Below the pieces are notes generated by a model. The model had not been told where the DNA came from. It saw only the letters and a program-made list of their open reading frames with translations, and did no database searches. A stretch of 26,484 nt of DNA from Macrostomum lignano. Taxonomy: Eukaryota. Location: NCBI GenBank assembly GCA_002269645.1, contig NIVC01005091.1, positions 1 to 26,484 of the forward strand, in the 5' to 3' direction. Below, one piece after another: positions 11,062 to 26,484 of this stretch (positions within the stretch are counted from its first letter, which is position 1; each line of letters begins with the position of its first letter). The position numbers were made by a program, and so were the translations under genes.

Positions 11062-11830
11062 GAACCAAATTGGCTCAGTCGGACCCTTCGAAGAAGGGAC
11101 AGAGACATGGATTCAATACCAGGAGCGCATTGAACAGTTCTTTGTTGCCAACGACATTGCAGACGAGAAAAGGAGAGCAGTGTTGCTAAGCACGTGTGAG
11201 AAACAAACATACGAGTATTACATATCAGTTGCTCTGCAGCCTTCTGTCGCCGAATAAGCCAGCCCAAACGTCTTACGCTGACATCTGCAAAACACTGAAG
11301 GAACACTTCGACCCAAAGCCGCCAGAAATCGTTTTGCGCCATCGCTTTTACACTCGAAACCACCAGCCTGGTGAATCCATTGCCATCTTCTTGGCCGATC
11401 TCCGCAAGTTCGGCTGCAATTTCACCAACCTGAACGGAATGCTGAGGGACAGGCTCGTGCTGGGCATCAACGATGACGGAATCCCGCGGAAGCTCCTTGC
11501 TGAGAAGGAACTGACTCTAGCAAAGGCACAGTCAACTGCACAAGCCCTCGCTACGGCCGCCGAGGGCACTCAACTTGTGATGAAGGGCACCGAGCCAGAG
11601 GCTGTTCATGTCGTTCAGCAGTCGGCAGCTGCCAGACGCTGTTTCCGGTGTCTCTCACAGCGGCACCTGGCGGCCAAGTGTGCCTTCTTGAGCAAGAATG
11701 CTTCAACTGTTCCAAGCCGGGGCACACGGCAGCTGCATACAAGTCCCAGGCAGCCAGTGGTCGATGCGAGAGCCAGGTGGCGGTGTGCGAAGTCGAGTCG
11801 GAGATTGAGGAGACACACTCTCTGCACGTG
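11060..11830 (+). pseudogene. gag: Ty3/Gypsy (Mag-like) gag, frameshifted
   Basis: Typical Mag-type N-terminus (W..Y.ERIEQFFVANDI) and MLRDRLVLGI. CCHC knuckle CFRCLSQRHLAAKC at 11640-11681. A second knuckle (CFNCSKPGHTAAAY, last Cys lost) is in another frame. Frameshifts at ~11212-11224 and ~11690. Confidence 0.9.
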
Positions 11831-13721
11831 ATGGCCAAACGGAAGGGCAAGGTCCCGCCTATTGAGACGACGGTTACAATTGACGACGCACCCGTCCGTA
11901 TGAAGATTGACACAGGTGCGTCATTTTCGCTCATATCTGCCAGGACCTATCGCTCACAGCTGCTGGGGCGGCCCAAGCTCGAGCCTGCTGGCACGATGTT
12001 ACGAACGTACTCCGGCGAGCCGGTCCACGGCAGGACCCGCGTTGGCGTGCGCGCCGAGGAAACTGCCAAGGTCCTGCCACTGCTCGTGGTGGATGGCACC
12101 GGTTCAGATTTGATTGGGCGAAACTGGCTGGCCGATCTGCCCCTGGACTGGCGCGGGATCAAGCAGATGCAGTTACATCAGAGCGGTGAGCATCTGAAGA
12201 TCCGCGACCTGCTGAAGCAGTATTCCGGTGTGTTCGAGTCCGGACTCGGCCAGTACAGAGGGCAGCCGGTGCAGCTGCGACTGAAGGACGGGGCCCGGCC
12301 TCGCTTTCTGCCTTTTGCCTTTTGCCAAGGTTGAGGCACAGCTGGACAAGGAGATTGAGCAAGGTGTGCTCAAGCCCGTGAGTAGCTCTGACTATGCATC
12401 GCCTATTGTTCTGGTGCTCAACCCCGATGGATCCGTTCGCATCTGTGCCAACTTCAAGCGGACGGTGAATCTCGACGTGGAACCAGACAAGTATCCGCTG
12501 CCTCGGATTGACGAGCTATTCGCTAAGCTGGCCGGAGGGCAGAAGTTCACGAAGCTTGACCTCTCACAGGCGTATTCGCAGATGCCTCTGGATGAGGCTT
12601 CTCAGCAGATCTGCACCATAAACACGTCTAAAGGGCTGCTGCGCTACGGCTTACGTTTGGCGTGGCGCCTGCGGTCGGAATTTTTCAGAGGCACATGGAT
12701 AGCCTGCTGCAGGCCATTCCGCACGTCGAATGCTTCATTGATGACCTCATCATCACCGGGAGCGACGACGAGAGCCACCTGCGTTCACTAGAGCTGGTTC
12801 TACAGCGCCTGCAGCAGAATGGTCTGAAGTGCGGACCGAACAAGTGCAGCTTCATGCAGGAGAGCGTGAGCTATCTGGGACACCGAATCGATGCCACCGG
12901 CTTGCACCCGCTGCCAGAGAAGGTGCGGGCCATCGTGGATGCGCCAACGCCCAAGGACGAGACTCAGCTCCGCAGCTTCCTGGGGTTGGTCAACTACTAC
13001 GGAAAATTCCTGCCGAACCTGTCCACCGAGCTGGCCCCACTGCATCGTCTACTGAACCGGGACGCTGGCTGGCGCTGGGGCACCGCACAGGATGTTGCCT
13101 TCCGTAAGAGCAAAGAGCTGCTCAGCAGGGCGCCCATGCTCGCACATTTCGATGAGCGGCAGCCGCTAGTGCTGGAGTGCGACGCTTCTCCATACGGCAT
13201 CGGCGCTGTCATCAGCCATCGAATCGACGGAATCGACAGACCGATCGCCCTTGCCTCGCGCTCGCTGCACGAAGCCGAGACTAAGTACTCCCAGCTGGAG
13301 AAGGAGGCGCTGGCAGTGGTGTTCGGAGTGAAGAAGTTTCACATGTTTCTATGCGGCCGGCAGTTCACGCTGATCAGCGATCACAAGCCGCTGTTGGGGC
13401 TGCTGCATGAGTCGAAGCCGATTCCTGCCATGGCTTCCAGCAGAATCCAGCGGCGGGCGCTCACCCTGGCCGCCTACGGCTACTCCATGGTGCACAGGGC
13501 GGGCAGGTCGCTGCTGCGTGCGAATGCTCTCAGCCGTCTGCCGCTGCCAGAGAGGCCGAAGGATTCACTGGTGCTAGCGGATGTCGTGCTGCTCATGGAC
13601 ATGCTGGACGAAGGTCCAATGACGGCACGACACATTCGAGCATGGACAAGGACGGACCCCGTGCTGTCCAAGGTGTTGCGATCAGCCGAGTCCGGCCAGT
13701 GGCCGGCGAGACCGCCTCCGT

Positions 13722-13723
<2 letters not shown>
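11831..13723 (+). pseudogene. pol: Ty3/Gypsy pol (protease, RT, RNase H), frameshifted and truncated before integrase
   Basis: Protease IDTGAS (Asp at 11909). RT motifs SPIVLV, YPLPRIDELF, KLDLSQAY and FIDD (12734-12745). RNase H motifs CDASPYGIGAV, EKEALA, SDHKPL and ANALSR (normally ADALSR). Frameshifts at ~12320 and ~12655. Confidence 0.95.
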
Positions 13724-14886
<1,163 letters not shown>

Positions 14887-15842
14887 TAACACGAGTAGTT
14901 TATAGTATCGGTGGCAGACAATAAAATTTATAGTAAGGCTGTTGTCAAGCATGGTGGTGTATTTGATTATTGAAAAAACTGGACCTTCTTAGAGTTTAGC
15001 GCAGCTATTCCAGTTCTTGAAATCGTAAACAACTTGATTTATTTTGACGCTCGTAGAAATTTTATAAACAAATTAAAAAAACATTTACGCATTTAAACTT
15101 TGGTCAAGCCTTTTTCGAAAAAAATTCTGCTAACTGGGGCGGCGAAAACGCGATTAAAGCAGGTGTCAGACCAGTGTATAAACGTGCTGTGTCAGCGGGA
15201 TGAAACTTACAGTAGAAATATTGTAGTAAAATGTCTAAATAGTCTGATAAAAATTGGTTTTTGTGGGCTATTTTAGTTTCAACATGAGCAGATGCAGAGT
15301 GCAGAAATGTTGAACGCTCATCATAATTAGTCTCTGCTTTTTCGCTTTGCTAATCACGTCCGGGACCTTCAGGCGGCGTGGCTGTCCGGCCTATTGGTGC
15401 CGGGGCCGTCCACTGGGTCGTAGAACTGAGCCCTGTCTGCAATGTTGGGAAAAATTGTTTGCTATTATATTTACTAATTATACTGTATTAGTGAATAGTG
15501 ACTGTGTCCTTGATCTGACTGTCTTAAGACTCATCGATTTATCATGGCTTGTTTACCAGATTTGGGATATTACAAATGCCAAACATAACAAGAAATAGAA
15601 ATAATCTGACATGGGCATGTAGGGCATGTAAAGCGGATGGCTGCTGCACTGGCAGATAGCGCCAATCCTGGAGGCCGGCTGTGGCTGCAGAACGCATTGG
15701 CAAAATGGGAAGCTCTCAGCTTTTGTCATCAATTCTCAATATTTCACCTTCTGAACATCCGAATCGCAAATCGAACAAATCTAAGTTTTGCTCGAGCTGA
15801 GCTCATGAGTTTATTGAGCTAGCTTTTATGAAGTGCTACCTC

Positions 15843-16235
15843 GCTCACTCACTCACTCACTCACTCACTCACTCACTCACTCACTCACTCACTCACTCAC
15901 TCACTCACTCACTCACTCACTCACTCACTCACTCACTCACTCACTCACTCACTCACTCACTCACTCACTCACTCACTCACTCACTCACTCACTCACTCAC
16001 TCACTCACTCACTCACTCACTCACTCACTCACTCACTCACTCACTCATTCACTCACTCACCCACACTCATTCACTCACTAACTCACTCACTCACTCACTT
16101 ACTCACCCACTCACTCACTCACTCACTCACTCACTCACTCACTCACTTACCCACTCACTCACTCACTCACTCACTCACTCACTCACTCACTCACCCACTC
16201 ACTCACTCACTCACTCACTCACTCACTCACTCACT
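15843..16235. repeat. (ACTC)n microsatellite, ~390 bp
   Basis: Read directly. The left half is perfect and the right half has scattered variants. Confidence 0.97.
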
Positions 16236-16653: not shown

Positions 16654-16899
16654 TCAATTTTGAAGCTGTGCATATGTATGGAGATAGATTTTCCTACACA
16701 TCTCGTGCTTTGTTTTTAAATTGTAGACATCCGAAAAGGTGCAGCTAGTTTCTAGCGGCTTGCTTGTAACCAAGGTTAAGAAAGAACAATCTAAATCCCC
16801 ACGCTGAGTCCCCAAACCTGGTCCGTACGGCTCCTCAATCCGGTAGTTCGTCTTCAAGTTCAGTTCGTCCCTCAGGCGCCTGGTCTGCACAGCGTAGAC
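16654..16899 (-). CDS. Exon o: end of TM helix and cytoplasmic tail (3' boundary uncertain)
   Basis: Acceptor CTGCAG at 16900-16901, then VYAVQTRRLRDELNLKTNYRIEEPYG. Basic residues follow the TM, as expected on the cytoplasmic side. Confidence 0.7.
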   Translation of the reverse strand, partial: VYAVQTRRLRDELNLKTNYRIEEPYGPGLGTQRGDLDCSFLTLVTSKPLETSCTFSDVYNLKTKHEMCRKIYLHTYAQLQN

Positions 16900-19800
16900 C
16901 TGCAGGTTTTAGGAGGGTTTGTGCGGTTTTAGCGGACTTCCCATATCACCCAGTTGCTTAGGAAATAGCTTTTGCGAGCTTCTTCATGTAACTAAAACAA
17001 GGATTTTAGTTGTCCCCGACTGCTACTTAGTCGGTATAAGCAAAGAAGCACAGCTAATGGGCACAAGCGCTAGTGCAGTATTGCATACAGCAGCATTCAA
17101 GTCGCTTACGATGATAAAGATGACGAGGACAAGCAGGAAAAGTCCGCCAATTACTGCAACCAGAATGATCAGGATGGTGTAATCCTGCGACACGGCCTCT
17201 GTGCCACCGCTTGTGGCTGTGCCGGCACTGGCTGCCGCAGTCGTGGCCGCTGCCCGAGTGGTGGATTCGACGGCCGTTGTCGTTGAGCTGGTACTGGTGA
17301 GGCTTGTGACGGCTGTGAAATTAGGGAACCATTCGAAATTATTTCATATGGTATATACATGTCAAAGGCACAAAAAGCGCTTGCAATTTAAGCTGCTTTG
17401 CTCACCCGAAGATCCAATGTTATCGATGATGACACCACCCAGATCTGTTGCTTTCAAACCTTTTGTGAGAAGCTCGATAATAGAAGCTGCTGTGTTTGTA
17501 GACGTGTCTCGAACCACAAGGTTTCCACTGATGACAACACTTCCCGACTTAAACTGTAAGTTCACTGCGTTTTGCAGTTCACCATAAAGCGAAGTTGACC
17601 TGGATGATTTCATAACGGTCTCGAAGGCGTAGTTAGCCAGCTGCTTGTAGCGCCAACTGTTCGGGTCTGCATAGTCATCGAACCACTGCAAATTTGAAAA
17701 GCGGAACGAGAACGGCACGGTCTTGACGTTCTTAAACACAGGCTGGTAGTTGGACGGACAGATGCAAGACGTCGTTGTGGGCGCAACAGTCGTAGTTGTA
17801 GTCGGAGTTGTAGTAGTTGTAGTCGTCGTCGTTGTTGTTGTGGTGCTCGTAGTCGGAGTAGTTGTGGTAGTAGTCGGAGTAGTTGTGGTAGTAGTCGGAG
17901 TAGTTGTGGTAGTAGTCGGAGTAGTTGTGGTAGTAGTCGGAGTAGTTGTGGTAGTAGTCGGAGTAGTTGTGGTAGTAGTCGGAGTAGTTGTGGTAGTAGT
18001 CGGAGTGGTTGTGGTAGTAGTCGGAGTAGTTGTGGTAGTAGTCGGAGTGGTTGTGGTAGTAGTCGGAGTGGTTGTGGTAGTAGTCGGAGTGGTTGTGGTA
18101 GTAGTTGGAGTGGTTGTGGTAGTAGTCGGAGTGGTTGTGGTAGTAGTCGGAGTGGTTGTGGTAGTAGTCGGAGTGGTTGTGGTAGTAATCGGAGTGGTTG
18201 TGGTAGTAGTCAGAGTGGTTGTGGTAGTAGTCGGAGTGGTTTTGGTAGTCGTCGGAGTGGTTGTCGTAGTAGTTGGAGTGGTTATTGATGTAGTCGTTGT
18301 CAAACACACTGCTGGAATTGTCGTAAAGCAGCCGTTGATGATGAGGTACATCTGGAAATTTGTGCTCGTCGCTGAAGCTGTCTTAAGCGTGCGCGGCAAA
18401 ATGATGAACTGAGCTACTGGAAAGCCGATGTCAAAGCACAGATCCGCCGCAGTGTCTGAGGATACCAAGCTAGCAAGATTTTGGAAAGGTGCCGCATAGA
18501 ACTGCTTGTATCGAATCGTAGCCTCTCTAACGTTTCCGGAGAGACACAACTAGAATTATGGCAGGGTAGAGCATTTACCGTCAGACTGATGCGTTCTCTG
18601 CACTGCTTAGAGAAATAAAGCTAAAAAATTTAGAGCTTACCCTGTCAATATAAATTCCACTACGACAGTTATTAATGGTAAGATCCACAGTCAAATATCC
18701 ATCCGTTCCGGTGCGAATATTGAAGCCAGTAGCATCACTGAAGCTGGTAGCCCCCGTGATATAGTCCATTGGCAGGAGCAATGGGTTCGAAAGAGCGTTT
18801 ACCATTGGACAGACTGAATAAACAATTTGTTTTTAGCCGTTAGTGTTTAGAATAAACAAACAATTTTGTCTTAACATAAAGGATAGTGCATTTGACTTAC
18901 ACGTGGTTCCCACAGTCGTAACGGTCGTGGGGTTTTGGCAGTAGATGAACTGCTAGTCATCGTGCTTGACGTGGTTGTGCTAGTGCTTGTCGTCGTGCTG
19001 GTTGTTGGAGTGCATCCCGGAATCGGCATGAAGCAGCCATACACCGACAGGAAGAAGTTGTAAGTGCTAGATCCGGTGGCTGTAGAAGACTTCAGTTCCT
19101 TCGGTGCGATGATGATAGTGCTCACGTTGAAGTTCAGGTCGTAGCACAGCAGTCCTGGACCGTCTTGAATAATAGTTGTGGACTGAACCAGTGGCAGGTA
19201 TGACTGAGATGCCGATGTCTGGTAGATGAGGTCAGCTCTCTTTACATTGCCGCCGATAAGGCAAACCTAAAAAGTGCAAGGATTTTTCGGTTACAGATTG
19301 AATCGTTACGCGACTCTAATGACCAATTAAATAAATGCTACAGAGCCTAATTGTACCTGTGTGATGTATTCTGGTCTGCGGCAGTTGTTGGATGTCAAAT
19401 CGATGAAAAGTCCTTCGCCGGGTGCTCTAGACATTGTGTAGCCCAATACAGGAGAGAATGTTGCTCCACTGATGGCCCAGGAAGGCAGCAACGATGTATC
19501 AGCGATCGCATCGACAGCAGGACAAACTAAAAGTAATATTCAAGTTCAGTATACGATAACAAAAAGATTGAAAGAAATTAAGCCAAAGTACGAGCTACTT
19601 ACATGTTGGCTTTGGTGTAGTAGTTGCTGTCGTAGTTGAACTTGTTGTTGTCGATGTGGTGGAAGCTGTTGAAGTAGTTGGTGTTGTTGTTGCAGTTGAC
19701 TTTGTTGTCTCAGTTGTGGAAGCAACTGGTGTTGTAGTTGTAGAAGATGTTGGCAGTGTAGTAGTTTTCGTTGTTGGTGTAGTTGTAGTTGTAGAACTTG

Positions 19801-22800
19801 TTGATGTTGACAATGTGCTTGAAGTTGTAGTAGAGGTCGAAGTTTTAGTTGTTGGAGATGTAGTCGATGTGCTGGTTGTCGGAGTCGTCGTTGTTGAGGT
19901 CGTCGTTGTGGGTGTTGTAGTCGTTGTACTCGTTGTCGTTGAAGTCGTGGTTGAAGTTGTCGTTGGAGTAGTAGTTGTGGTGGTAGTCGTTGGAGTCGTG
20001 AGGCAGGCGCCTGTTAGCGGCGTGAAGCAGGCATCGACTCTAACAAAGAAATTGAACATACTGTCGGTCGAGAACGATTTGAGTCGCAGAGGCACAATTG
20101 CTATTTTAGCTACAGTCTCTTTGTTGAGAACTGTGTAGCACCACGGACTCGTAGTGTCAACTGAGATGCTCGAAGCAGACAAATCAGGCGAGTACTTTTC
20201 AGTGCTTAATCTTGCAAACAGCAAGTTGGCTTCTCGCACGTTACCAATCAGACAAATCTGAAAGAATAAGCGGACATTCCAGTGTATGGAAACATGTGAG
20301 GAAAATATAGTTCAAGACACGTCATAAATGACATACAAACGCGTACCCTATCAACGACTATTGGCGGCCGACATGAGTTTACAGTCAGATCAATCTCAAG
20401 GCTTCCGTTCTTCAGAGGAAGTCTGTAGCCATAGAATGGGTCGTATTCTCCACCAGTTACAGCGAATGAAGGAATCAAGTTGGACTGGTAGAAGCCGTCA
20501 ATAGCGCAAGACGTTGTGGTTTCCAGTGTTGTGGTCAGAGTAGTTCTTGTTGTCGTCGATGTCGTAGTGCTGGTCGTTGGAGTCGTCGTAGTGGTAGTTG
20601 TAGTCGGTGTAGTTGTAGTAGTGCTTGTTGTAACAGTAGTCGGCGTGGTCGGCGTTGTAGTAGTTGTAGTCGTACTGGTAGTGCTGGTGCTGGTCGTTGT
20701 GGTCGGCGTGGTCAGACACGTGGAGTTAAGAGGATTGATGCAGGCCATGAGAGACACGAAGAACTGGTACTCGGTTGAGTTGTAGCCAGGCTTTGTAGCT
20801 TGAGGAACAATCATTAGTTCAGAGGTGAGTCTATTAAGATCATAGCACAGAGGATCTCCAGTTGAAGAAGTCTTTCCTGGCGTGTTGAAGTCGGGTACCA
20901 GTTTGTCGCTGGTTGGCTCTCGGATCAAGATTTGTGCATTGAACACGTTTCCAGCGATGCACAGCTGCAATCACGATCGTTGACGATTAGTTAGATTAAT
21001 GTTATATACGAGCGTAGTTACTAAGCGAGTAAGCATATCCATATCGGAAACAGGAATACAACATCTAAACTTTACCCTTGAAATCACAGCAGCGGGTCGG
21101 CAGCCAAAGACAGTAAGATCGATTTTCAATGCGGCTTTGAGGGGAAGAATGTATCCAAAAAGCTCTCTGTATGTGCCACCAGTGACTGCGAATGATGGCA
21201 GCAAGTCCGAACGACTGAAGGCATCAACGAGGCATGCTGAAAATCAAGTAGTCAGTTTGCACAAATGATTAATCGCATCTTGTAAGCTGGGTTTCCAAAG
21301 AAACTGGAGAACAAAAACTAAAAAGTTTCTTTTTAAACTTTGTTTTAACTTACAAGTAGTAGTAGTCGGGGTTGTTATTGTAGTTGTTGGAGTCGTCGTC
21401 ACAGTCGTGGTGGGCGTAGTTGTAGTTGTAGTAGTGGTAGGTGTAGTTGTTGTAGTGGAAGTCGAAGAGGTGCTTGTCGATGTTGGCGTTGTTGTAGTTG
21501 TAGATGACGTTGGTAGAGTAGTTGGCGTTGTGGTTGTCGATGATGTCGTTGTGGTTGTTGTAGGAGTTGTTGTTGGCGTTGTAGTTGTTGAAGTTGTGGT
21601 CGGTGTTGTTGTGCTTGTTGTTGTGCTTGTAGTGGGAGTTGTGGGAGTTGTGGTAGTAGTAGTGGCTGTAGTCGTTGTGGTTGTGGTTGTTGGTGTTGTT
21701 TGGCATGTGTCGTTAAGCGGCAAGAAGCAAGCTTGTATAGTCAAGAAAAACTGATAGTTCACTGCAGGAGCTTGAAGAGCAGTAGGCTTGACTTGGAGCT
21801 CGACCATGTCGATGTTCAAATTGTAGCATAGTTGAGAACTACTAGTTTCATAGTTTATTGAGTCGGCGAAGATAACCGGATAGTCGGAATATGTTCTTCG
21901 ATAAACCACGTTTGATCTTTTCACATTTCCTCCTATCAAGCAAACCTGAAATGTTCCAAGCGTTTTAAACGGAGTATCTGAAGACAAAATTCTCGTAGTC
22001 TATAGTAAGCACACTGCTTAGCTGTTAAAACTACTACATCATTCGTAGAAAAGACTTTTGACTCAGAAACAAAAAATATTCAAATAGTTTTACGTGATAA
22101 ACTGTTTAGGTTTGCTCTCAACACTAACTGTCGAACAAAAACTATAAGAGTTTAACTATAGTTTAACTAAACTATAAAAGTAGTACTTTGTACTAATTGC
22201 TTAATAGTACTACAAGGGTGTTCAAAACGTCTTAGGACGTTTTCTCATTACTGTTGGGCTGCGCCCTTCCAGTGCTTGTGTACTTTGTCTTGTTTTCATT
22301 TTTTCAGGCCGCCCCGCCCCGTCCCCCGTCTCGCGCCCGGGCCAGGGTTTGTGAGAGGCGTAAGCCTCAACCCTGGCCTCGCCCTTTCTGCACCCAGCCC
22401 CGGCCCAACTTCTGTCCAATCTGGTTGCTGACCCTACCCCCTCCCTCTTTGCCCGCCTCACCCTAGGGCTGCTCGTATTGGCTGGCTGGCTGATAAGCCG
22501 GCTGGGCCCCAGGGTTTGGCTCGCCCTCTCCATTCTGCCCTACCCCTCCCCTTTTTGTGTAAATATTATGTAAAGGCTAGCCCTGAGCGGGCTGCGCTCC
22601 ACGCTTTTCGTTCTTTCTGATTTTCCGTTCTTCGGCGTACCTCTGCCATTTGCGTACCAATAACTGCTTCGTGCCAATAACTGCTTTTTACCAATAAACG
22701 TTCCGCCAATTCTAACGCTTCGTTAATAAGTCGATACATCAAGAAGAGGTGAGCGCGTGCTTTCTTCTTTCGGGTTGCCGCGTAGGGCCGGATCTGCAGG

Positions 22801-25800
22801 GACCGGGACCGGTGAACACTCGCTGATCCCAGGGTCGTCGGAGTAGCCAGGGAAGGGCTGGGACCGGGGTGTCTCAGGCGGGAGGGCCCGAACCATGACC
22901 CGTCCAGTGGCCATTAGGCCGAGACACAACATTACTCTTTTTAACAGTCAGCAATAGTACTCCTTGCTTGGCACATCTTTCGTTACTCTGTAATATACGT
23001 ACCTGATAAACAGTCAAGGCTCCCCGGCATCCACGAGCTGTGAGGTCAATCGCTATGTATCCACCGCTGGAAACTGGAATGTTCCAGCCAGTAGCGCCGT
23101 CAAACGTCGCACCAGTGATCGTAAATTGCGGCAAGTACACAGGACTCGATAAACCATTAACGACGGGACAAACTGTAATGACAACGTGAAAATGTCTTAT
23201 TTATTAAGTTATTAATACACTACTTCTCGAATACAGCTCTCAATAACAATTGGGCACTTAAAAGAATCATGTAACGATCTTATTTACTTGTTGTGGGCAC
23301 TGTTGTAGTACTTGTACTTGTCAGAGTAGTTGTAGTGGTAGTGGTCGACGTTGTCGGTGTAGTTGTTGTGGTTGTTGTGGGTGTTGTAGTTGTTGTAGTG
23401 GTCGTTGTTGTCGGAGTTGTCAAGCAGGTATTATTCAAAGGTGTGAAGCAAGCCTTGATTGTGATGTAAGCTCGAAATGCCGTGTCGGAGCTGAAAGCGC
23501 TCTTCAACTGTTGCGGTGAGATGCGCACACCAGTGAGCATCATTCCTGTAGGCGGAGTGAAGCACAACGGATCGGAAACCCCAGTAGCTGACTGGCTTGC
23601 AGACGGAAGATTCGGACTGAATGGTCCTCCGTATGTAGTTTGATACAGGATGTAGGAACTCTGAATGTTTCCTAGTAGACAAATCTGCAAAAACCGTTGT
23701 GTGGTACACAATGTGTATTGTCTAGTGGTATGTCTGAAACTTATTAGCAAAGTGTCACGTTGTAACGAAATTCCTGCTCAATACTCACGCTCTCAACAGT
23801 AATTGGCATGCGGCAGCCAAACACGGAGATGTCCACTGTCATTGCGTAGGTACCACCAGTTCGAATCATGTACCCTGAAACAGTGTAATTGGCTCCACTG
23901 ACTGCAAATGATGGAATAAAGCGCTCATCCGACAAGCCATCAACTGCACATGAAGGCGTAGTTGTAGTAGCAGTGGTCGTTGTGCTCGTCGTCGTGCTCG
24001 TCGTTGATGTCGACGTGGTGGGTGTAGTTGTCGCTGTTGATGTTGTCGTCGGTGTAGTCGCAGTCGTTGTTGTGCTCGTCGAAGTGGTTGGTGTTGAAGT
24101 TGTCGTTGAGGTAGTCGTCGTAGTACACGATACTGGCAGAGGAGTGAAACAGGCCTCGATGGAAAGGAAAAACTGATACAACGAATCGCCTGAGGCTGCG
24201 CTTTTAAACTCTTTCGGAACAATTCTCAGCTCGGAAATGGGAAGCATTGGGTAGTAGCACAGCGGTGTAGCAGTGTCACTTGTATTGTACAGCGACTGCT
24301 CGAAGAAGTCCCAGTAGAGGGTGGAGCCTTGACGGATGATAAGATCAGCTCGTTTTACATTACCGCCGAACAGACAAATCTAAAACGGAACGCATCTAAT
24401 TTTAGCATTTGAAATTGCTATTTTATTTAAATATCAAGAAAAGAACAAGTTACATACCCTATTAATTAGGATCGGTGTGCGGCAACCGGATACAGAAATG
24501 TCCACATAGACGCCTTCCACTGAGCCTCTGGGTACATTATATCCTGTTAACGGATTATAACTAGGAGCATTGATAGAAGAACTGGGAATCAAGACGCCGT
24601 TGAGTCCGTTCACCAAACAGGATGTTGTTGTCGACGGAGTGGTTGTAGTAGTGCTAGTTGCTGTTGTGGTCGATGTCGGCGTTGTGCTAGTAGTTGTGGG
24701 AGTTGTTGTTGTGGATTTAGTAGTCGACGTTGTAGAAGTCGTCGTTGTCGACGTCGTTACAGGTTGCGTTTGACAGGCCGTAGTTAGAGGCGCGAAACAG
24801 CCCTCAAGGCTCAGGAAGAATGAATAATTCGTTTCCAGCGACGAGCTGTTCAGTAGTGCGACTGGCGTGATTGCAATGCTAGATATGTTTGCCCCGAGAG
24901 TTATGCAAAGAGGAGTCAACGAAGACGAGACAGATACCAAATTGGATTCCAAGACAAGATCGAACCGACCGGTCGGATAAGTCGTCTGGGTAGACACCGT
25001 TACCTGCCTTACATTTCCTGTCACACAAACTCTCGTTAGGTATGTAGGAACAGGATTACATCCTCCAGCAGTCAAATCTATGATAAGATCTCGTCTCGGA
25101 CTCACTGGCATCTCGTATCGACCAGTTACATAAGTGGCGCCGGTAATGGCCCAATCAGGTATGTACTTTCTATCACTAAGGCCATTGAGTGCTGGACAAA
25201 TTGTAGGCTTGACAGTAGTTGTAGACGTTGTTGTCGTTGACGTTGTCGTAGGAGTTGTAGTTGTGCTGGTAGTTGTAGGTGTTGTAGTGGTTGTTGAAGT
25301 AGTCGTCGGTGTTGTGGTAGTGCTACTAGTTGTAGTAGGCGTTGTAGTTGTGCTTGTAGTACTCGAAGTTGGAGTGGTTGAAGTGGTAGATGTAGATGTT
25401 GAAGTGGAGGTTGTTGGTGCGACTGTGGTAGACGTCGTCGTTGGAGTTGTAGTGGTAGTAGGAGTAGTCGATGTCGATGTTGTTGGTGTAGTTGTGGTTG
25501 ACGTCGTCGTGGGTCGTTGTCGTTGACGTCGTCGTGGGTGTCGTTGTTGTGGTGGTGGTTGTTGTAGTCGTAGTAGTGAGACAGCTGGCATTTAAGGCAG
25601 TGAAGCAGCCGTAGATATTCATATAAAATGTGAAATCTGATCCTGTTCCAGGAGTCATTGTCTGTGGCATCAGCTGCAAACCGGTGATGTCTCTGTTCAC
25701 TTGAAGACAAAGCAGCCCGTTTCCACCCGTAACGGATGCAGGGAAAAGCACAAGCCTAGAATCCAGATTGTTCTGTACTGAAATCAGAGTCGTTTGCACA

Positions 25801-26484
25801 TTTCCACCGAGACAGACGCTAAAAATTCGAATTGGCGCACGACATCCGCGAGCAGAGATATCCACCACAATAGAACCAAGTGGTTGAACAACGAATGCTC
25901 CTGCTCGATTAATAGATGCCCCAGAAATGTCTTGATCTGGTATAAACTGCGCGCTTGTCATTCCGTCGACCACAGGACAGTCTAAAAATCATATTTTTAC
26001 AGACAAATGATGATTATAACAAAAAACAATAAAATGAAACGAAAGGTTAGATTTCTATTACTACTAATTCTTACAGGTCGTAGGTGTAGTTGTAGTAGTA
26101 GAAGTTGTTGTCGGTGTCGTCGGAGTAGTGCTTGTCGTTGTGCTGGGTGTCGTTGAAGTAGTTGAAGGCGTGGTTGTAGCTGTACTGGTTGTTGTAGGAG
26201 TTGTAGGGGTTGTTGTTGGTTCTTTTGTTGTTGTTGATGTTGTTGTGCTTGTTGTGCTTGAAGTTGGTGTTGTCGTCGGTGTAGTGGTTGTTGGGGTCGA
26301 TGTCGTCGGTGTTGTTGTGGTTGATGTTGTTGTTGAGGTTGTGGGAGTAGTTGTAGTTGACGTTGTTGATGTCGTCGTAGTCGTTGTAAGACAGGACGCG
26401 TTTAAGTTGCTGAAGCAGCCATATATCGATAAGAAGAAGTAGTAGGAACTTGCTGTCGTCTTGTAAAGCTGCGGTTCTACCTGA
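16654..26484 (-). CDS. Large type I membrane mucin-like protein (5'-partial): tandem six-Cys domains alternating with Thr/Pro tracts, SEA domain, TM helix, cytoplasmic tail
   Basis: 15 exons joined by 14 GT-AG introns with compatible phases, apart from two local frameshifts (~25513 and ~18930). Exons are listed separately below. Confidence 0.9.
17110..17312 (-). CDS. Exon n: Ser/Thr/Ala stalk plus transmembrane helix (frame absent from the ORF track)
   Basis: Hand translation gives AVTSLTSTSSTTTAVESTTRAAATT...QDYTILIILVAVIGGLFLLVLVIFII. Phase-0 donor GTAAGC at 17109. Confidence 0.9.
17406..18549 (-). CDS. Exon m: C-half of D9, long (T6P)n tract, SEA domain
   Basis: SEA-like segment PFSFRFSNLQWFDDYADPNSWRYKQL...FKSGSVVI. 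Phase-1 donor GTGAGC at 17405. Confidence 0.9.
17851..18270. repeat. 21-bp coding tandem repeat (~20 units) encoding TTTTTTP
   Basis: AGT(A/G)GTTGTGGTAGTAGTCGG is repeated with very few substitutions. Confidence 0.9.
18641..18813 (-). CDS. Exon l: N-half of D9
   Basis: Reads CPMVNAL...VDLTINNCR. Donor AGG|GTAAGC at 18640. Confidence 0.85.
18901..19266 (-). CDS. Exon k: C-half of D8 plus short Thr/Ser tract; apparent 1-nt frameshift near its end
   Basis: Starts VCLIGGNVKRADL. Donor GTAAGT at 18900. Confidence 0.8.
19357..19526 (-). CDS. Exon j: N-half of D8 (absent from the ORF track)
   Basis: Hand translation gives CPAVDAIADTSLLPSWAISGATFSPVLGYTMSRAPGEGLFIDLTSNNCRRPEYITQ. Donor GTACAA at 19356. 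Confidence 0.85.
19603..20257 (-). CDS. Exon i: C-half of D7 plus Thr tract
   Basis: Starts ICLIGNV. Phase-1 donor GTAAGT at 19602. Confidence 0.85.
20347..20964 (-). CDS. Exon h: C-half of D6, Thr tract, N-half of D7
   Basis: Starts LCIAGNV. Donor AGG|GTACGC at 20346. 206 codons. Confidence 0.85.
21076..21236 (-). CDS. Exon g: N-half of D6
   Basis: Reads CLVDAF...IDLTVFGCRP. Phase-0 donor GTAAAG at 21075. Confidence 0.85.
21354..21945 (-). CDS. Exon f: C-half of D5 plus Thr tract
   Basis: Starts VCLIGGNV. Phase-1 donor GTAAGT at 21353. Confidence 0.85.
22252..22931. mobile_element. Solo LTR (680 bp) inside the intron between exons e and f
   Basis: TGTTG...CAACA termini with a 4-bp TTAC duplication on both sides. 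GC-rich relative to the intron. AATAAA at 22693 and repeated CCAATAA on the plus strand suggest + orientation. Confidence 0.8.
23003..23172 (-). CDS. Exon e: N-half of D5
   Basis: Reads CPVVNGL...IDLTARGCR. Donor CAG|GTACGT at 23002. Confidence 0.85.
23288..23684 (-). CDS. Exon d: C-half of D4 plus Thr tract
   Basis: Starts ICLLGNI. Phase-1 donor GTAAAT at 23287. Confidence 0.85.
23789..24379 (-). CDS. Exon c: C-half of D3, Thr tract, N-half of D4
   Basis: Starts ICLFGGNV after TTTTAG. Donor GTGAGT at 23788. 197 codons. Confidence 0.85.
24458..25981 (-). CDS. Exon b: domains D1 and D2, N-half of D3, Thr tracts; one frameshift
   Basis: Acceptor at 25982-25983 and phase-0 donor GTATGT at 24457. 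Joins ORFs 25326-25973 and 24434-25591. Confidence 0.85.
26075..26484 (-). CDS. Mucin-like gene exon a (5'-partial): C-half of domain D0 plus Thr tract
   Basis: Reads YYFFLSIYGCFSNLNASC then T-rich. Phase-1 donor GTAAGA at 26074. Confidence 0.85.

What the first reader, a model, noticed from the sequence alone, without database searches (positions are those of the whole stretch)
16654..26484. Beads-on-a-string membrane mucin: at least 10 divergent globular domains on Thr-rich stalks above a SEA domain and TM helix
Seen: the hand-spliced product alternates a ~130-aa Cys domain with Thr/Pro tracts of roughly 20-170 aa, then SEA, stalk, TM and tail. It is ~2,470 aa in this window and continues off the right edge. 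Established: SEA plus TM plus PTS tracts defines membrane mucins such as MUC1 and MUC16. Inference: interspersing a different variant of a folded domain after every PTS tract is not the usual architecture. It could be a multivalent adhesion, glycan-binding or microbe-binding surface protein of the glycocalyx.
Basis: partly seen in the sequence, partly recalled or inferred. Interest (0 to 1): 0.8.

Follow-up and report, generated by a model that had tools for sequence, protein, structure and literature searches.

The report
Flatworm membrane mucin with discoidin-like beads
This is a real, very large cell-surface mucin gene of the flatworm Macrostomum lignano, in which sugar-coated threonine stalks alternate with divergent copies of a previously unnamed, discoidin-like binding-type domain. 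It is an uncharacterised variant of a known kind of protein rather than a new kind.

Summary
On the minus strand, 15 GT-AG exons (window 26483-16654) encode about 2,472 aa. The product has one partial and nine complete 133-142-aa domains with six invariant Cys. These are separated by Thr-rich tracts of 37-179 aa, followed by a SEA domain with a GSVVI motif, a stalk, one TM helix and a basic tail. It is private to this assembly and probably an assembly error.

The locus is 97.4% identical to a Macrostomum lignano contig. That contig shows the 5' end: a signal-like segment and five more domains, about 14 in all.

The repeated domain has no Pfam or PDB sequence match. Two AlphaFold models (pLDDT 86 and 90) match F5/8 type C (discoidin) domains: neuropilin b1, factor V/VIII C2 and lactadherin C2, with TM 0.5-0.69.

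Only 20 related clusters turned up among 1.84 billion proteins. They include a chiton 'mucin-2-like' protein and an unidentified eukaryote, both with the same domain/PTS alternation.

Verdict: an uncharacterised SEA-type membrane mucin carrying a new discoidin-like domain family, so a new variant of a known kind. A ligand-binding role is inferred, not shown. Interest is moderate.

The parts
16654..26483 (-). The part of the mucin gene that lies in the window. There are 15 exons (high..low): 26483-26075; 25981-24458; 24379-23789; 23684-23288; 23172-23003; 21945-21354; 21236-21076; 20964-20347; 20257-19603; 19526-19357; 19266-18903; 18813-18641; 18549-17406; 17312-17110; 16899-16654.
   Evidence: GT-AG boundaries with consistent phases. 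The junction 23789/23684 is the same as in the database gene model PAA49141.1. A domain spliced at 20347/20257 folds with pLDDT 92-95 across the junction.
26391..26483 (-). D0: the C-terminal 31 aa of a domain cut by the window edge. It corresponds to domain 'e' in L001.
25581..25979 (-). D1: discoidin-like domain, 133 aa, no intron.
25514..25516 (-). Frame-breaking 2-nt (AC) deletion relative to the Mlig_3_7 contig, inside the D1-D2 PTS tract.
   Evidence: The other assembly is in frame here and carries seven private frame-breaking deletions of its own at sites where the window is open.
24773..25198 (-). D2: discoidin-like domain, 142 aa, no intron. This is the domain used for the first structure model.
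24125..24619 (-). D3: two exons with a phase-0 intron at 24457-24380.
23424..23950 (-). D4: two exons with an intron at 23788-23685.
   Evidence: The junction matches PAA49141.1.
21703..23170 (-). D5: two exons separated by a 1,057-nt intron (23002-21946).
20716..21234 (-). D6: two exons.
20003..20508 (-). D7: two exons. This is the domain used for the second structure model.
19012..19524 (-). D8: two exons.
18304..18811 (-). D9: two exons.
17767..18303 (-). Longest PTS tract: 179 aa, 82% Thr. Its core is a 21-bp tandem repeat (PTTTTTT, 20.7 copies, 96% matches, at 17849-18283).
17407..17766 (-). SEA domain. It carries a G-SVVI motif (17544-17530) at the position of the autoproteolytic G/SVVV site of SEA mucins.
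   Evidence: Pfam PF01390, E 2.4e-9. For a profile of three paralogous copies, five of the six best PDB hits are SEA structures. Motif located.
17182..17406 (-). Ser/Thr/Ala-rich juxtamembrane stalk, about 44 aa, spanning the intron 17405-17313.
16891..17181 (-). Transmembrane helix YTILIILVAVIGGLFLLVLVIFIIVYA, spanning the intron 17109-16900.
   Evidence: Single Kyte-Doolittle peak of 3.47. The exon boundary is the same as in paralogue P0021.
16654..16890 (-). Cytoplasmic tail, starting QTRRLRDELNLK. Its end is uncertain: read-through to the stop at 16654-16656, or an alternative donor near 16822.

Best explanation
This is the 3' two-thirds of a type I transmembrane mucin gene of the flatworm Macrostomum lignano (or a very close relative).

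The full protein is about 3,500 aa by my estimate. It starts with a signal-like hydrophobic segment. About 14 divergent discoidin-like beta-sandwich modules follow, separated by Thr-rich, presumably densely O-glycosylated, stiff spacers. A SEA domain with a canonical-looking G/SVVI self-cleavage motif, a short stalk, one TM helix and a short basic tail complete it.

Shown: the architecture, the fold class, the conservation and the relatives.

Inferred:
- The protein forms an extended glycocalyx rod on an epithelial surface.
- The SEA domain makes it a non-covalent two-chain molecule that can shed its ectodomain under force, as in vertebrate SEA mucins.
- The discoidin-like modules act as ligand-binding sites held at graded heights above the membrane. 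Each may have its own specificity for glycans, lipids or proteins of food, microbes, substrate or neighbouring molecules.
For: Gene model and architecture.

SEA, TM and motif.

Organism and 5' end:
- The window is 97.4% identical over 3.2 kb to contig NIVC01003964.1 of GCA_002269645.1.
- That contig shows IFAAAALLAVLTLPVAG, then DPFCSCVPLTTKYFF, a PTS tract and five more domains upstream.
- Paralogue A0A1I8HA14 starts with a Met-led signal peptide followed by the same motif.

Coding constraint: between the two assemblies pN/pS is 0.31 in the domains (16 synonymous, 15 non-synonymous, against a neutral expectation of about 1:3) and 0.23 in the PTS tracts.

Fold:
- AlphaFold pLDDT 86.0 and pTM 0.82 for D2; pLDDT 89.7 and pTM 0.85 for D7.
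- Foldseek top hits are almost all F5/8 type C domains (NRP1/2 b1, FV/FVIII C1/C2, lactadherin C2, CASPR2, muskelin) plus CBM32. E is 1e-4 to 1e-3 and TM is up to 0.69.
- hhalign against a FVIII-C2 orthologue profile is colinear over 126 columns. It pairs the first Cys and the 'ACF' Cys with the discoidin N- and C-terminal Cys (E 1.3e-3, probability 18%).

Module individuality: D4, D6, D8 and D9 match colinear positions of the paralogue at 44-54% identity, against 27-42% between copies within the protein. The array therefore diversified before the gene duplicated, and each position has been kept.

Variable regions: residues 31-40 and 71-90 are the least conserved, and 71-90 is also a low-pLDDT loop.

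Conserved architecture: the same domain/PTS alternation occurs in a chiton protein (XP_064614628.1) and on a 107-kb eukaryotic contig.
Against: - No expression, localisation, glycosylation, cleavage or binding data. The gene id was not found in any searchable paper or in the supplements checked.
- One frame-breaking indel lies in the window.
- The SEA match is lost to bias correction when the whole protein is scanned. Its matches to solved SEA structures are weak (E 0.05-0.3).
- No Pfam F5_F8_type_C match, and the hhalign probability is only 18%. Discoidin membership therefore rests on predicted structure.
- The initiator Met was not located.
- A discoidin-like fold does not by itself prove ligand binding. 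IFT25, for example, is among the hits.
Confidence: 0.8

Rival explanations
1. Same protein, but the discoidin-like modules are structural. They would mediate homotypic or lateral contacts that cross-link neighbouring mucin rods into a gel-like glycocalyx, as proposed for CysD domains in gel-forming mucins. In that case they would not recognise foreign ligands.
For: The placement of Cys-rich folded domains inside PTS tracts parallels CysD in MUC2/5AC/5B (established knowledge). The best-conserved parts are framework motifs: the N-terminal C..DG...IP..ITG, DLT..GCR, CL.GNV and ACF.PL..C. In the chiton relative the copies are nearly identical to each other, which does not suggest many specificities.
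Against: In M. lignano the copies are only 27-42% identical yet conserved by position in the paralogue. That is easier to explain by position-specific functions than by a generic cross-link. The nearest structural neighbours are ligand-binding discoidin domains and CBM32.
Confidence: 0.3
2. The ectodomain is mainly a shed or secreted product. After SEA cleavage it would be released into surface mucus, gut lumen or adhesive/egg coverings, so the protein would work as a secreted lectin-mucin rather than as a membrane glycocalyx component.
For: There is a canonical-looking GSVVI motif in the SEA domain, and SEA mucins are known to shed (established knowledge). Related domains occur in proteins with TIL and VWC modules typical of secreted mucin-like proteins. 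Lophotrochozoan gel-forming mucin-like proteins carry F5_F8 domains (PMC4948705).
Against: The TM helix, positive-inside tail and exon structure are conserved in the paralogue. Two other paralogues have diverged motifs (GSVKA, GSVAF), so cleavage may not be a family-wide requirement. M. lignano adhesive footprints were reported to lack glycocalyx lectin label (PMC6410801).
Confidence: 0.15
3. The locus is a decaying pseudogene or an assembly artefact of a repetitive region, not a functional gene.
For: There is a frame-breaking 2-nt deletion at about 25515. The surroundings are repeat-rich, with retroelement remnants and long microsatellites.
Against: Every other exon is open over about 7.4 kb of coding sequence, with intact splice sites. 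The indel is absent from the second assembly, which has its own private indels at sites where the window is intact. pN/pS is about 0.3. Independent gene models use the same splice junctions.
Confidence: 0.05

Closest known systems
SEA-type transmembrane mucins of vertebrates (MUC1, MUC3/12/13/17, MUC16)
   Same: Type I orientation, long PTS tracts, a membrane-proximal SEA domain with a G/SVV[VI] motif, one TM helix and a short tail. MUC16 also alternates a folded domain (SEA) with PTS linkers.
   Different: There is no sequence relationship outside the SEA profile. The interspersed folded domain is discoidin-like, not SEA or EGF, and the copies are deeply divergent rather than near-identical tandem repeats. 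The host is a flatworm. The architecture is probably assembled independently.
F5/8 type C (discoidin) domains: factor V/VIII C1/C2, neuropilin b1/b2, lactadherin/MFGE8 C2, CASPR2, DDR, bacterial CBM32
   Same: Predicted fold (TM up to 0.69), size, a Cys near each end of the domain, and weak colinear motif resemblance (C..GM...I.D..IT..S, then .VDL., then .I.P, then GC).
   Different: No match to PF00754 or to any PDB sequence. The domain has its own signature (invariant G-N after the central strand; four extra Cys in the flatworm copies). Ligands are unknown.
Hemolectin-type and lophotrochozoan gel-forming mucin-like proteins with F5_F8_type_C domains (Lang et al. 2016, PMC4948705)
   Same: Mucin-like proteins of protostomes that combine PTS regions with discoidin-type domains. 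Some distant relatives of the present domain sit next to TIL and VWC modules.
   Different: Those proteins are secreted, VWD-C8-TIL based, and carry canonical F5_F8 domains clustered in one region. Here there is no VWD, C8, TIL or CK, the domains alternate regularly with PTS tracts, and the protein is anchored by SEA and TM.
CysD domains in MUC2/MUC5AC/MUC5B, and chitin-binding (CBM14) domains in insect intestinal mucins and peritrophins
   Same: A 'beads on a string' layout in which small disulfide-bonded domains interrupt PTS tracts.
   Different: Unrelated folds, and secreted rather than membrane-anchored proteins.
Database relatives: M. lignano A0A1I8HA14 ('Membrane-associated protein'), PAA49141.1 (BOX15_Mlig023086g3, this locus), A0A1I8IX78; Liolophura sinensis XP_064614628.1 ('mucin-2-like')
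   Same: The same domain family (E down to 5e-194). A0A1I8HA14 has the same overall architecture, including signal peptide, SEA and TM. The chiton protein has the same domain/PTS alternation.
   Different: All are automatic, fragmentary and uncharacterised gene models. A0A1I8IX78 has four domains without PTS tracts. The chiton copies lack the internal Cys and are near-identical to one another.

Membership tests
SEA-type transmembrane mucin | One or more long Pro/Thr/Ser-rich (PTS) domains | tested here: met
   Ten tracts of 37-179 aa, nine with Thr 63-82% and one (37 aa) with Thr 38%. Thr is 32% of the whole product. One tract is a 21-bp VNTR.
SEA-type transmembrane mucin | SEA domain next to the membrane | tested here: met
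   PF01390 at 37.7 bits against a cut-off of 26.4, E 2.4e-9, on the isolated segment. For the paralogue profile, five of the six best PDB hits are SEA structures, at weak E of 0.05-0.3. The match is not reported in a whole-protein scan.
SEA-type transmembrane mucin | Autoproteolytic G/SVVV-type motif, and actual cleavage | tested here: inconclusive
   GSVVI is present at aa 2278. Cleavage itself cannot be tested with these tools. Paralogues have GSVKA and GSVAF.
SEA-type transmembrane mucin | Single TM helix with a cytoplasmic tail, type I topology | tested here: met
   One hydropathy peak (3.47) followed by QTRRLR. No dedicated TM predictor was available.
SEA-type transmembrane mucin | N-terminal signal peptide | tested here: inconclusive
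   This lies outside the window. The sister contig L001 has IFAAAALLAVLTLPVAG upstream of the first PTS tract, but the initiator Met was not located. Paralogue P0021 has a Met-led signal peptide.
SEA-type transmembrane mucin | Dense O-glycosylation of the PTS tracts | not testable with these tools
   Inferred from composition only.
F5/8 type C (discoidin) domain, Pfam PF00754 | Significant match to the family profile | tested here: not met
   No PF00754 hit for any of 18 family members even at E up to 10. No PDB sequence hit.
F5/8 type C (discoidin) domain, Pfam PF00754 | Distorted beta-barrel / jelly-roll fold of discoidin domains | tested here: met
   Two independent AlphaFold models (pLDDT 86.0 and 89.7). 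Foldseek gives 7 and 32 PDB hits at E<=1e-3, dominated by F5/8C domains, with TM 0.5-0.69. This rests on predicted structures only.
F5/8 type C (discoidin) domain, Pfam PF00754 | Remote sequence homology by profile-profile comparison | tested here: inconclusive
   hhalign of A2 against a profile of 31 FVIII-C2 orthologue sequences gives probability 18% and E 1.3e-3, colinear over 126 columns. Against a single sequence the probability is 1.5%. The template profile was narrow (FVIII only).
F5/8 type C (discoidin) domain, Pfam PF00754 | Disulfide linking the N- and C-terminal ends of the domain | tested here: inconclusive
   C1 and C134 are the only Cys conserved across the extended family, and hhalign aligns them to the two FVIII C2 Cys.
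Gel-forming (VWD-type) mucins | VWD-C8-TIL assemblies, CysD, C-terminal cystine knot | tested here: not met
   No such Pfam hits in the 2,472-aa product or in paralogue P0021. The six-frame reading of the 5' part in L001 shows only further copies of the same domain. That reading was not scanned with Pfam.

The most novel reading that the evidence does not exclude
This could be an old spiralian class of mucins, seen so far in a flatworm, a chiton and at least one more animal. In this class PTS stalks are regularly punctuated by a distinct, unnamed branch of the discoidin superfamily. In M. lignano the roughly 14 modules would have become position-specific lectin-like receptors with different specificities, displayed as a 'ladder' on a cleavable SEA anchor. 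That would make the protein a multi-specific capture or sensing device of the glycocalyx, for example for food diatoms, microbes or the animal's own adhesive secretions.
Probability: 0.3. Interest if true: 0.65.

Novelty: new variant of a known kind. Interest (0 to 1): 0.5.

Why it matters
Membrane mucins have been studied almost entirely in vertebrates, and the protein components of invertebrate glycocalyces are largely unknown. M. lignano is a transgenic, RNAi-amenable model. Its glycocalyx is known only through lectin staining (PMC6410801).

A gene that combines a cleavable SEA anchor with about 14 individually conserved discoidin-like modules gives a concrete, testable candidate for how a flatworm epithelium presents binding sites above a glycan brush. 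It also defines a domain family that current domain libraries miss, so these proteins are at present annotated as 'hypothetical', 'membrane-associated' or 'mucin-2-like'.

The finding does not overturn any current view. Its value is as a new domain family and a new mucin architecture for comparative mucin biology.

Tried and rejected
- Pfam on single domains, on all 18 family members, on paralogues and on the whole product: nothing for the repeated domain.
- PDB sequence search with the domain profile: nothing.
- Word-indexed homology search with the 9- and 18-sequence profiles: 0 and 1 hits. Only the exhaustive HMMER scan found relatives.
- UniProt-style names of relatives ('ZP domain-containing', 'PKD domain-containing', 'REJ domain-containing', 'DUF3707 domain-containing'): I saw no support for these in Pfam scans and treat them as low-complexity artefacts. 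One hit, P0011 (a bacterial-looking repeat protein), matches only profile positions 9-53 and looks spurious.
- SEA segment against PDB by single sequence: no SEA hit. The three-paralogue profile was needed.
- Literature: no paper mentions Mlig023086. It is not in the supplements of two M. lignano papers that use these gene ids. No paper combines discoidin, SEA and PTS in a mucin.
- A small intron to bridge the frameshift: rejected, because the two T-rich frames abut with no room for one, and the other assembly simply has two more bases.
- Locating the initiator Met in L001: not resolved.
- Finding the end of the tail by homology to the paralogue: only the first 19 tail residues align.

Full report
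**1. What is in the sequence**

The window is eukaryotic DNA. It has long microsatellites, retroelement remnants and short GT-AG introns.

Between 16654 and the right edge, the minus strand carries a string of long open segments. In these, Thr-rich stretches alternate with non-repetitive Cys-containing stretches. For each pair of neighbouring open segments I listed the GT..AG combinations that keep the frame. In every case the top-ranked or an equally plausible pair gave a short intron of 76-117 nt (one of 1,057 nt) and a regular phase pattern. Each module begins in phase 1. Seven of the nine complete domains are split by a phase-0 intron at the same position (...R | [ILV]CL.GNV...). Each module ends, after its PTS tract, in phase 1.

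The 15 exons give a 2,472-aa product ending at a TGA at 16654-16656.

**2. Anatomy of the product**

- D0: the last 31 aa of a domain cut by the window edge.
- D1-D9: nine complete domains of 133-142 aa.
- Linkers of 106, 128, 51, 58, 46, 117, 69, 134, 37 and 179 aa. Thr is 63-82% in all but the 37-aa one.
- A SEA domain.
- A 44-aa Ser/Thr/Ala stalk.
- One strongly hydrophobic helix (Kyte-Doolittle 3.47 over 19 aa), followed by QTRRLR.
- A tail of up to 78 aa.

The last PTS tract is a true VNTR: a 21-bp unit encoding PTTTTTT, 20.7 copies, 96% matches. The other tracts are irregular.

The nine domains share six invariant Cys plus invariant P14, D41, G61, N62 and P112. All 36 pairs are significantly similar, at 27-42% identity and E from 2e-9 to 2e-35.

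**3.

*The frameshift.* The frame is broken once, inside the PTS tract between D1 and D2. Alignment with a second assembly shows that the window lacks two bases (AC) there. That assembly in turn has six private 1-nt deletions and one 2-nt deletion in exons where the window is open. Private indels scattered between two assemblies of the same locus are what long-read assembly errors look like. Allelic differences would also produce this pattern. The consensus of the two assemblies is an intact ORF.

*The 3' end.* The 3' end of the tail is not settled. There is a plausible donor near 16822 (ACCAG|GTTTGG). The paralogue's tail aligns only for its first 19 residues.

**4. Source organism and the rest of the gene**

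An exhaustive HMMER search with the nine-domain profile against 1.84 billion representative proteins found only 20 clusters at E<=1e-3. The best are Macrostomum lignano proteins.

One of them, PAA49141.1 (BOX15_Mlig023086g3), is nearly identical to D3c-D4 of the window. It is spliced exactly at my junction 23789/23684.

Its contig is NIVC01003964.1 of GCA_002269645.1. I fetched part of it as L001. It is 97.4% identical to window 26204-22991. It extends about 8 kb further upstream. There it shows, in order:

- a signal-like hydrophobic segment (IFAAAALLAVLTLPVAG);
- a short motif DPFCSCVPLTTKYFF;
- a PTS tract;
- five more domains (a-e, where e = D0).

The full gene therefore has about 14 domains. 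I estimate about 3,500 aa. I could not find the initiator Met.

A paralogue, A0A1I8HA14 (1,617 aa, a gappy gene model), starts with a Met-led signal peptide and the same FCSCVPLTTKYFF motif. It ends with SEA, TM and tail, and its TM/tail exon boundary is the same as here.

**5. Is the gene under constraint?**

Between the window and L001 there are 40 exonic substitutions.

- In the domains there are 16 synonymous and 15 non-synonymous changes, over 455 synonymous and 1,378 non-synonymous sites (pN/pS 0.31).
- In the PTS tracts there are 6 and 3 (pN/pS 0.23).

The sample is small, but it argues for purifying selection and against a pseudogene.

**6. What the repeated domain is**

*By sequence it is unnamed.* There is no Pfam hit for any copy, for paralogues or for distant relatives, even at E up to 10. 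There is no PDB sequence hit.

*By predicted structure it is discoidin-like.* I modelled two copies, using the nine window copies as the alignment.

| Copy | pLDDT | pTM | Reference |
|---|---|---|---|
| D2 (unspliced) | 86.0 | 0.82 | |
| D7 (spliced across my junction) | 89.7 | 0.85 | |

Both are all-beta. In D7 the spliced junction lies inside a confident strand.

Foldseek against the PDB returns almost only F5/8 type C (discoidin) domains and their carbohydrate-binding cousins. These are neuropilin-1/2 b1, factor V and VIII C1/C2, lactadherin C2, CASPR2, muskelin, IFT25 and CBM32.

- For D2, seven hits reach E<=1e-3, with TM 0.44-0.57.
- For D7, 32 hits do, with TM up to 0.69 and rmsd 3.4-5 Å.

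*A profile-profile test.* I compared the family with a FVIII-C2 orthologue profile. I first confirmed my recalled FVIII C2 sequence against the PDB, at 465 bits. I then built the profile from database hits. The comparison gives a colinear alignment over 126 columns with E 1.3e-3 but only 18% probability.

It pairs these elements:

- the first Cys and the GM...I.D..IT motif;
- the ..VDL. strand;
- the .I.P strand;
- the final ACF/GCE Cys.

Across the extended family (flatworm, chiton, unknown eukaryotes) the only conserved Cys are C1 and C134. These are the positions that form the N-to-C disulfide in discoidin domains. The family's own hallmark is an invariant G-N.

My reading is that this is a very divergent branch of the discoidin / galactose-binding-domain-like superfamily. 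It is not a member of Pfam F5_F8_type_C as currently defined.

**7. Evolutionary pattern**

Within the protein the copies are 27-42% identical. D4, D6, D8 and D9, however, find their best matches at colinear positions of the paralogue, with 44-54% identity. The array therefore diversified before the gene duplicated, and each position has since been kept.

The least conserved stretches are residues 31-40 and 71-90 of the domain. The second is a long, low-confidence loop in both models. Variable loops on a conserved jelly roll are how discoidin domains and CBMs usually build their binding sites (established knowledge). That these particular loops do so is inference.

Outside flatworms:

- The chiton Liolophura sinensis has a 'mucin-2-like' protein with seven nearly identical copies alternating with PTS tracts.
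- A 107-kb eukaryotic contig from an ENA assembly (L002) has at least six divergent copies, one per exon, alternating with TTTVAP-type PTS tracts.
- Transcript-like JGI contigs encode proteins with TIL and VWC modules followed by three or four copies.

The domain/PTS alternation is thus a conserved design, not a peculiarity of this locus.

**8. The SEA module**

The isolated segment matches Pfam SEA above the curated threshold. A profile of the three paralogous M. lignano segments picks out SEA structures as five of its six best PDB matches, though only at E 0.05-0.3. These are the TMPRSS11D SEA domain (two entries), MUC16 SEA and MUC1 SEA (two entries).

The window copy has FKSG-SVVI at the expected place. 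This fits the G/SVVV autoproteolysis motif of MUC1-type SEA domains (established knowledge). The paralogues have GSVKA and GSVAF. Cleavage is therefore plausible here but unproven, and perhaps not general.

**9. How it most likely works**

*Shown:* this is a type I membrane protein with an enormous ectodomain, in which stiff PTS spacers separate about 14 compact disulfide-bonded beta-sandwich modules.

*Inferred:*

- The PTS tracts are O-glycosylated and extended. The modules would then be displayed at intervals along a rod that could reach hundreds of nanometres.
- The SEA domain gives a force-sensitive, non-covalent joint near the membrane.
- The modules are the functional 'beads'. They would either be ligand-binding sites with position-specific specificities (my preferred reading, about 0.4 on its own) or homotypic cross-linkers of the glycocalyx (about 0.3).

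The tissue is unknown. M. lignano has a lectin-positive glycocalyx, including on the microvilli of the adhesive organs (PMC6410801). I found nothing that links this gene to any tissue.

**10. Comparison with what is known, and novelty**

The C-terminal half of the design (PTS, SEA, TM) is that of vertebrate SEA mucins (PMC1552070). Folded domains interrupting PTS tracts are also well known from MUC16, from CysD domains and from insect intestinal mucins. Canonical F5_F8_type_C domains are already noted as characteristic of lophotrochozoan gel-forming mucin-like proteins (PMC4948705).

What I did not find described is a SEA/TM mucin whose PTS region is regularly punctuated by discoidin-like modules. 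I also found no domain model for this family.

The proteins are in public databases, but only as fragmentary automatic gene models. I rate the finding a new variant of a known kind, of moderate interest.

Noticed in passing
window 10976-13720 (+): Remnants of a Ty3/gypsy-type retroelement: zinc knuckle, aspartic protease, RT and RNase H, spread over three frames and therefore degenerate. It ends abruptly at a 1.16-kb (GATA)n array at 13722-14886.
   Followed up: partly
window 5276-6871 (-): An uninterrupted 532-aa ORF with no Pfam or PDB sequence match. It may be a large exon of a neighbouring gene or part of a mobile element.
   Followed up: partly
window 5-3563 and 15840-16235: Very long microsatellite and minisatellite blocks. 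(TATC)n arrays alternate with a 22-bp repeat (TAGACACAGATCCCTAGCCTGT). A (CTCA)99 array lies directly 3' of the mucin gene.
   Followed up: no
window 21946-23002 (intron inside D5): The only long intron of the gene. It holds a GC-rich block of about 700 nt (roughly 22220-22930) with no other copy in the window. The Mlig_3_7 contig stops aligning at 22991, about 120 nt before its own end, so the two assemblies cannot be compared here.
   Followed up: partly
L001 2774-3600 versus L001 7480-8201: In the sister contig the second domain (b) and the fifth (e = D0 of the window) are almost identical: 1 difference in 59 aa of the N-terminal half. This points to a very recent internal duplication or an assembly duplication. 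The true domain count (13 or 14) needs checking.
   Followed up: no
L001 8061-11253 versus window 26204-22991: The Mlig_3_7 assembly carries six 1-nt and one 2-nt frame-breaking deletions in exons of this gene. This explains why the public gene models of the locus are short fragments with out-of-frame tails.
   Followed up: yes
L002 (ENA ERZ25069853 ctg28616l, 3904-24410): An unidentified AT-rich eukaryotic contig encoding a giant mucin-like gene. It has one discoidin-like domain per exon, alternating with TTTVAP/TPTPGTTTTA-type PTS repeats, with (TA)n microsatellites between them. The source organism is unknown.
   Followed up: partly
P0013, P0018, P0025 (JGI/IMG transcript-like contigs): Long proteins from an unidentified eukaryote. 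A different ~110-aa domain alternates with PTS tracts, followed by TIL and VWC modules and then 3-4 copies of the discoidin-like domain. This may be a secreted counterpart of the family.
   Followed up: no
window 4098-4616 (+/-): A G+C-rich 60-bp tandem repeat (3.2 copies at 4387-4572) inside a strongly GC-skewed segment. No function is assigned.
   Followed up: no
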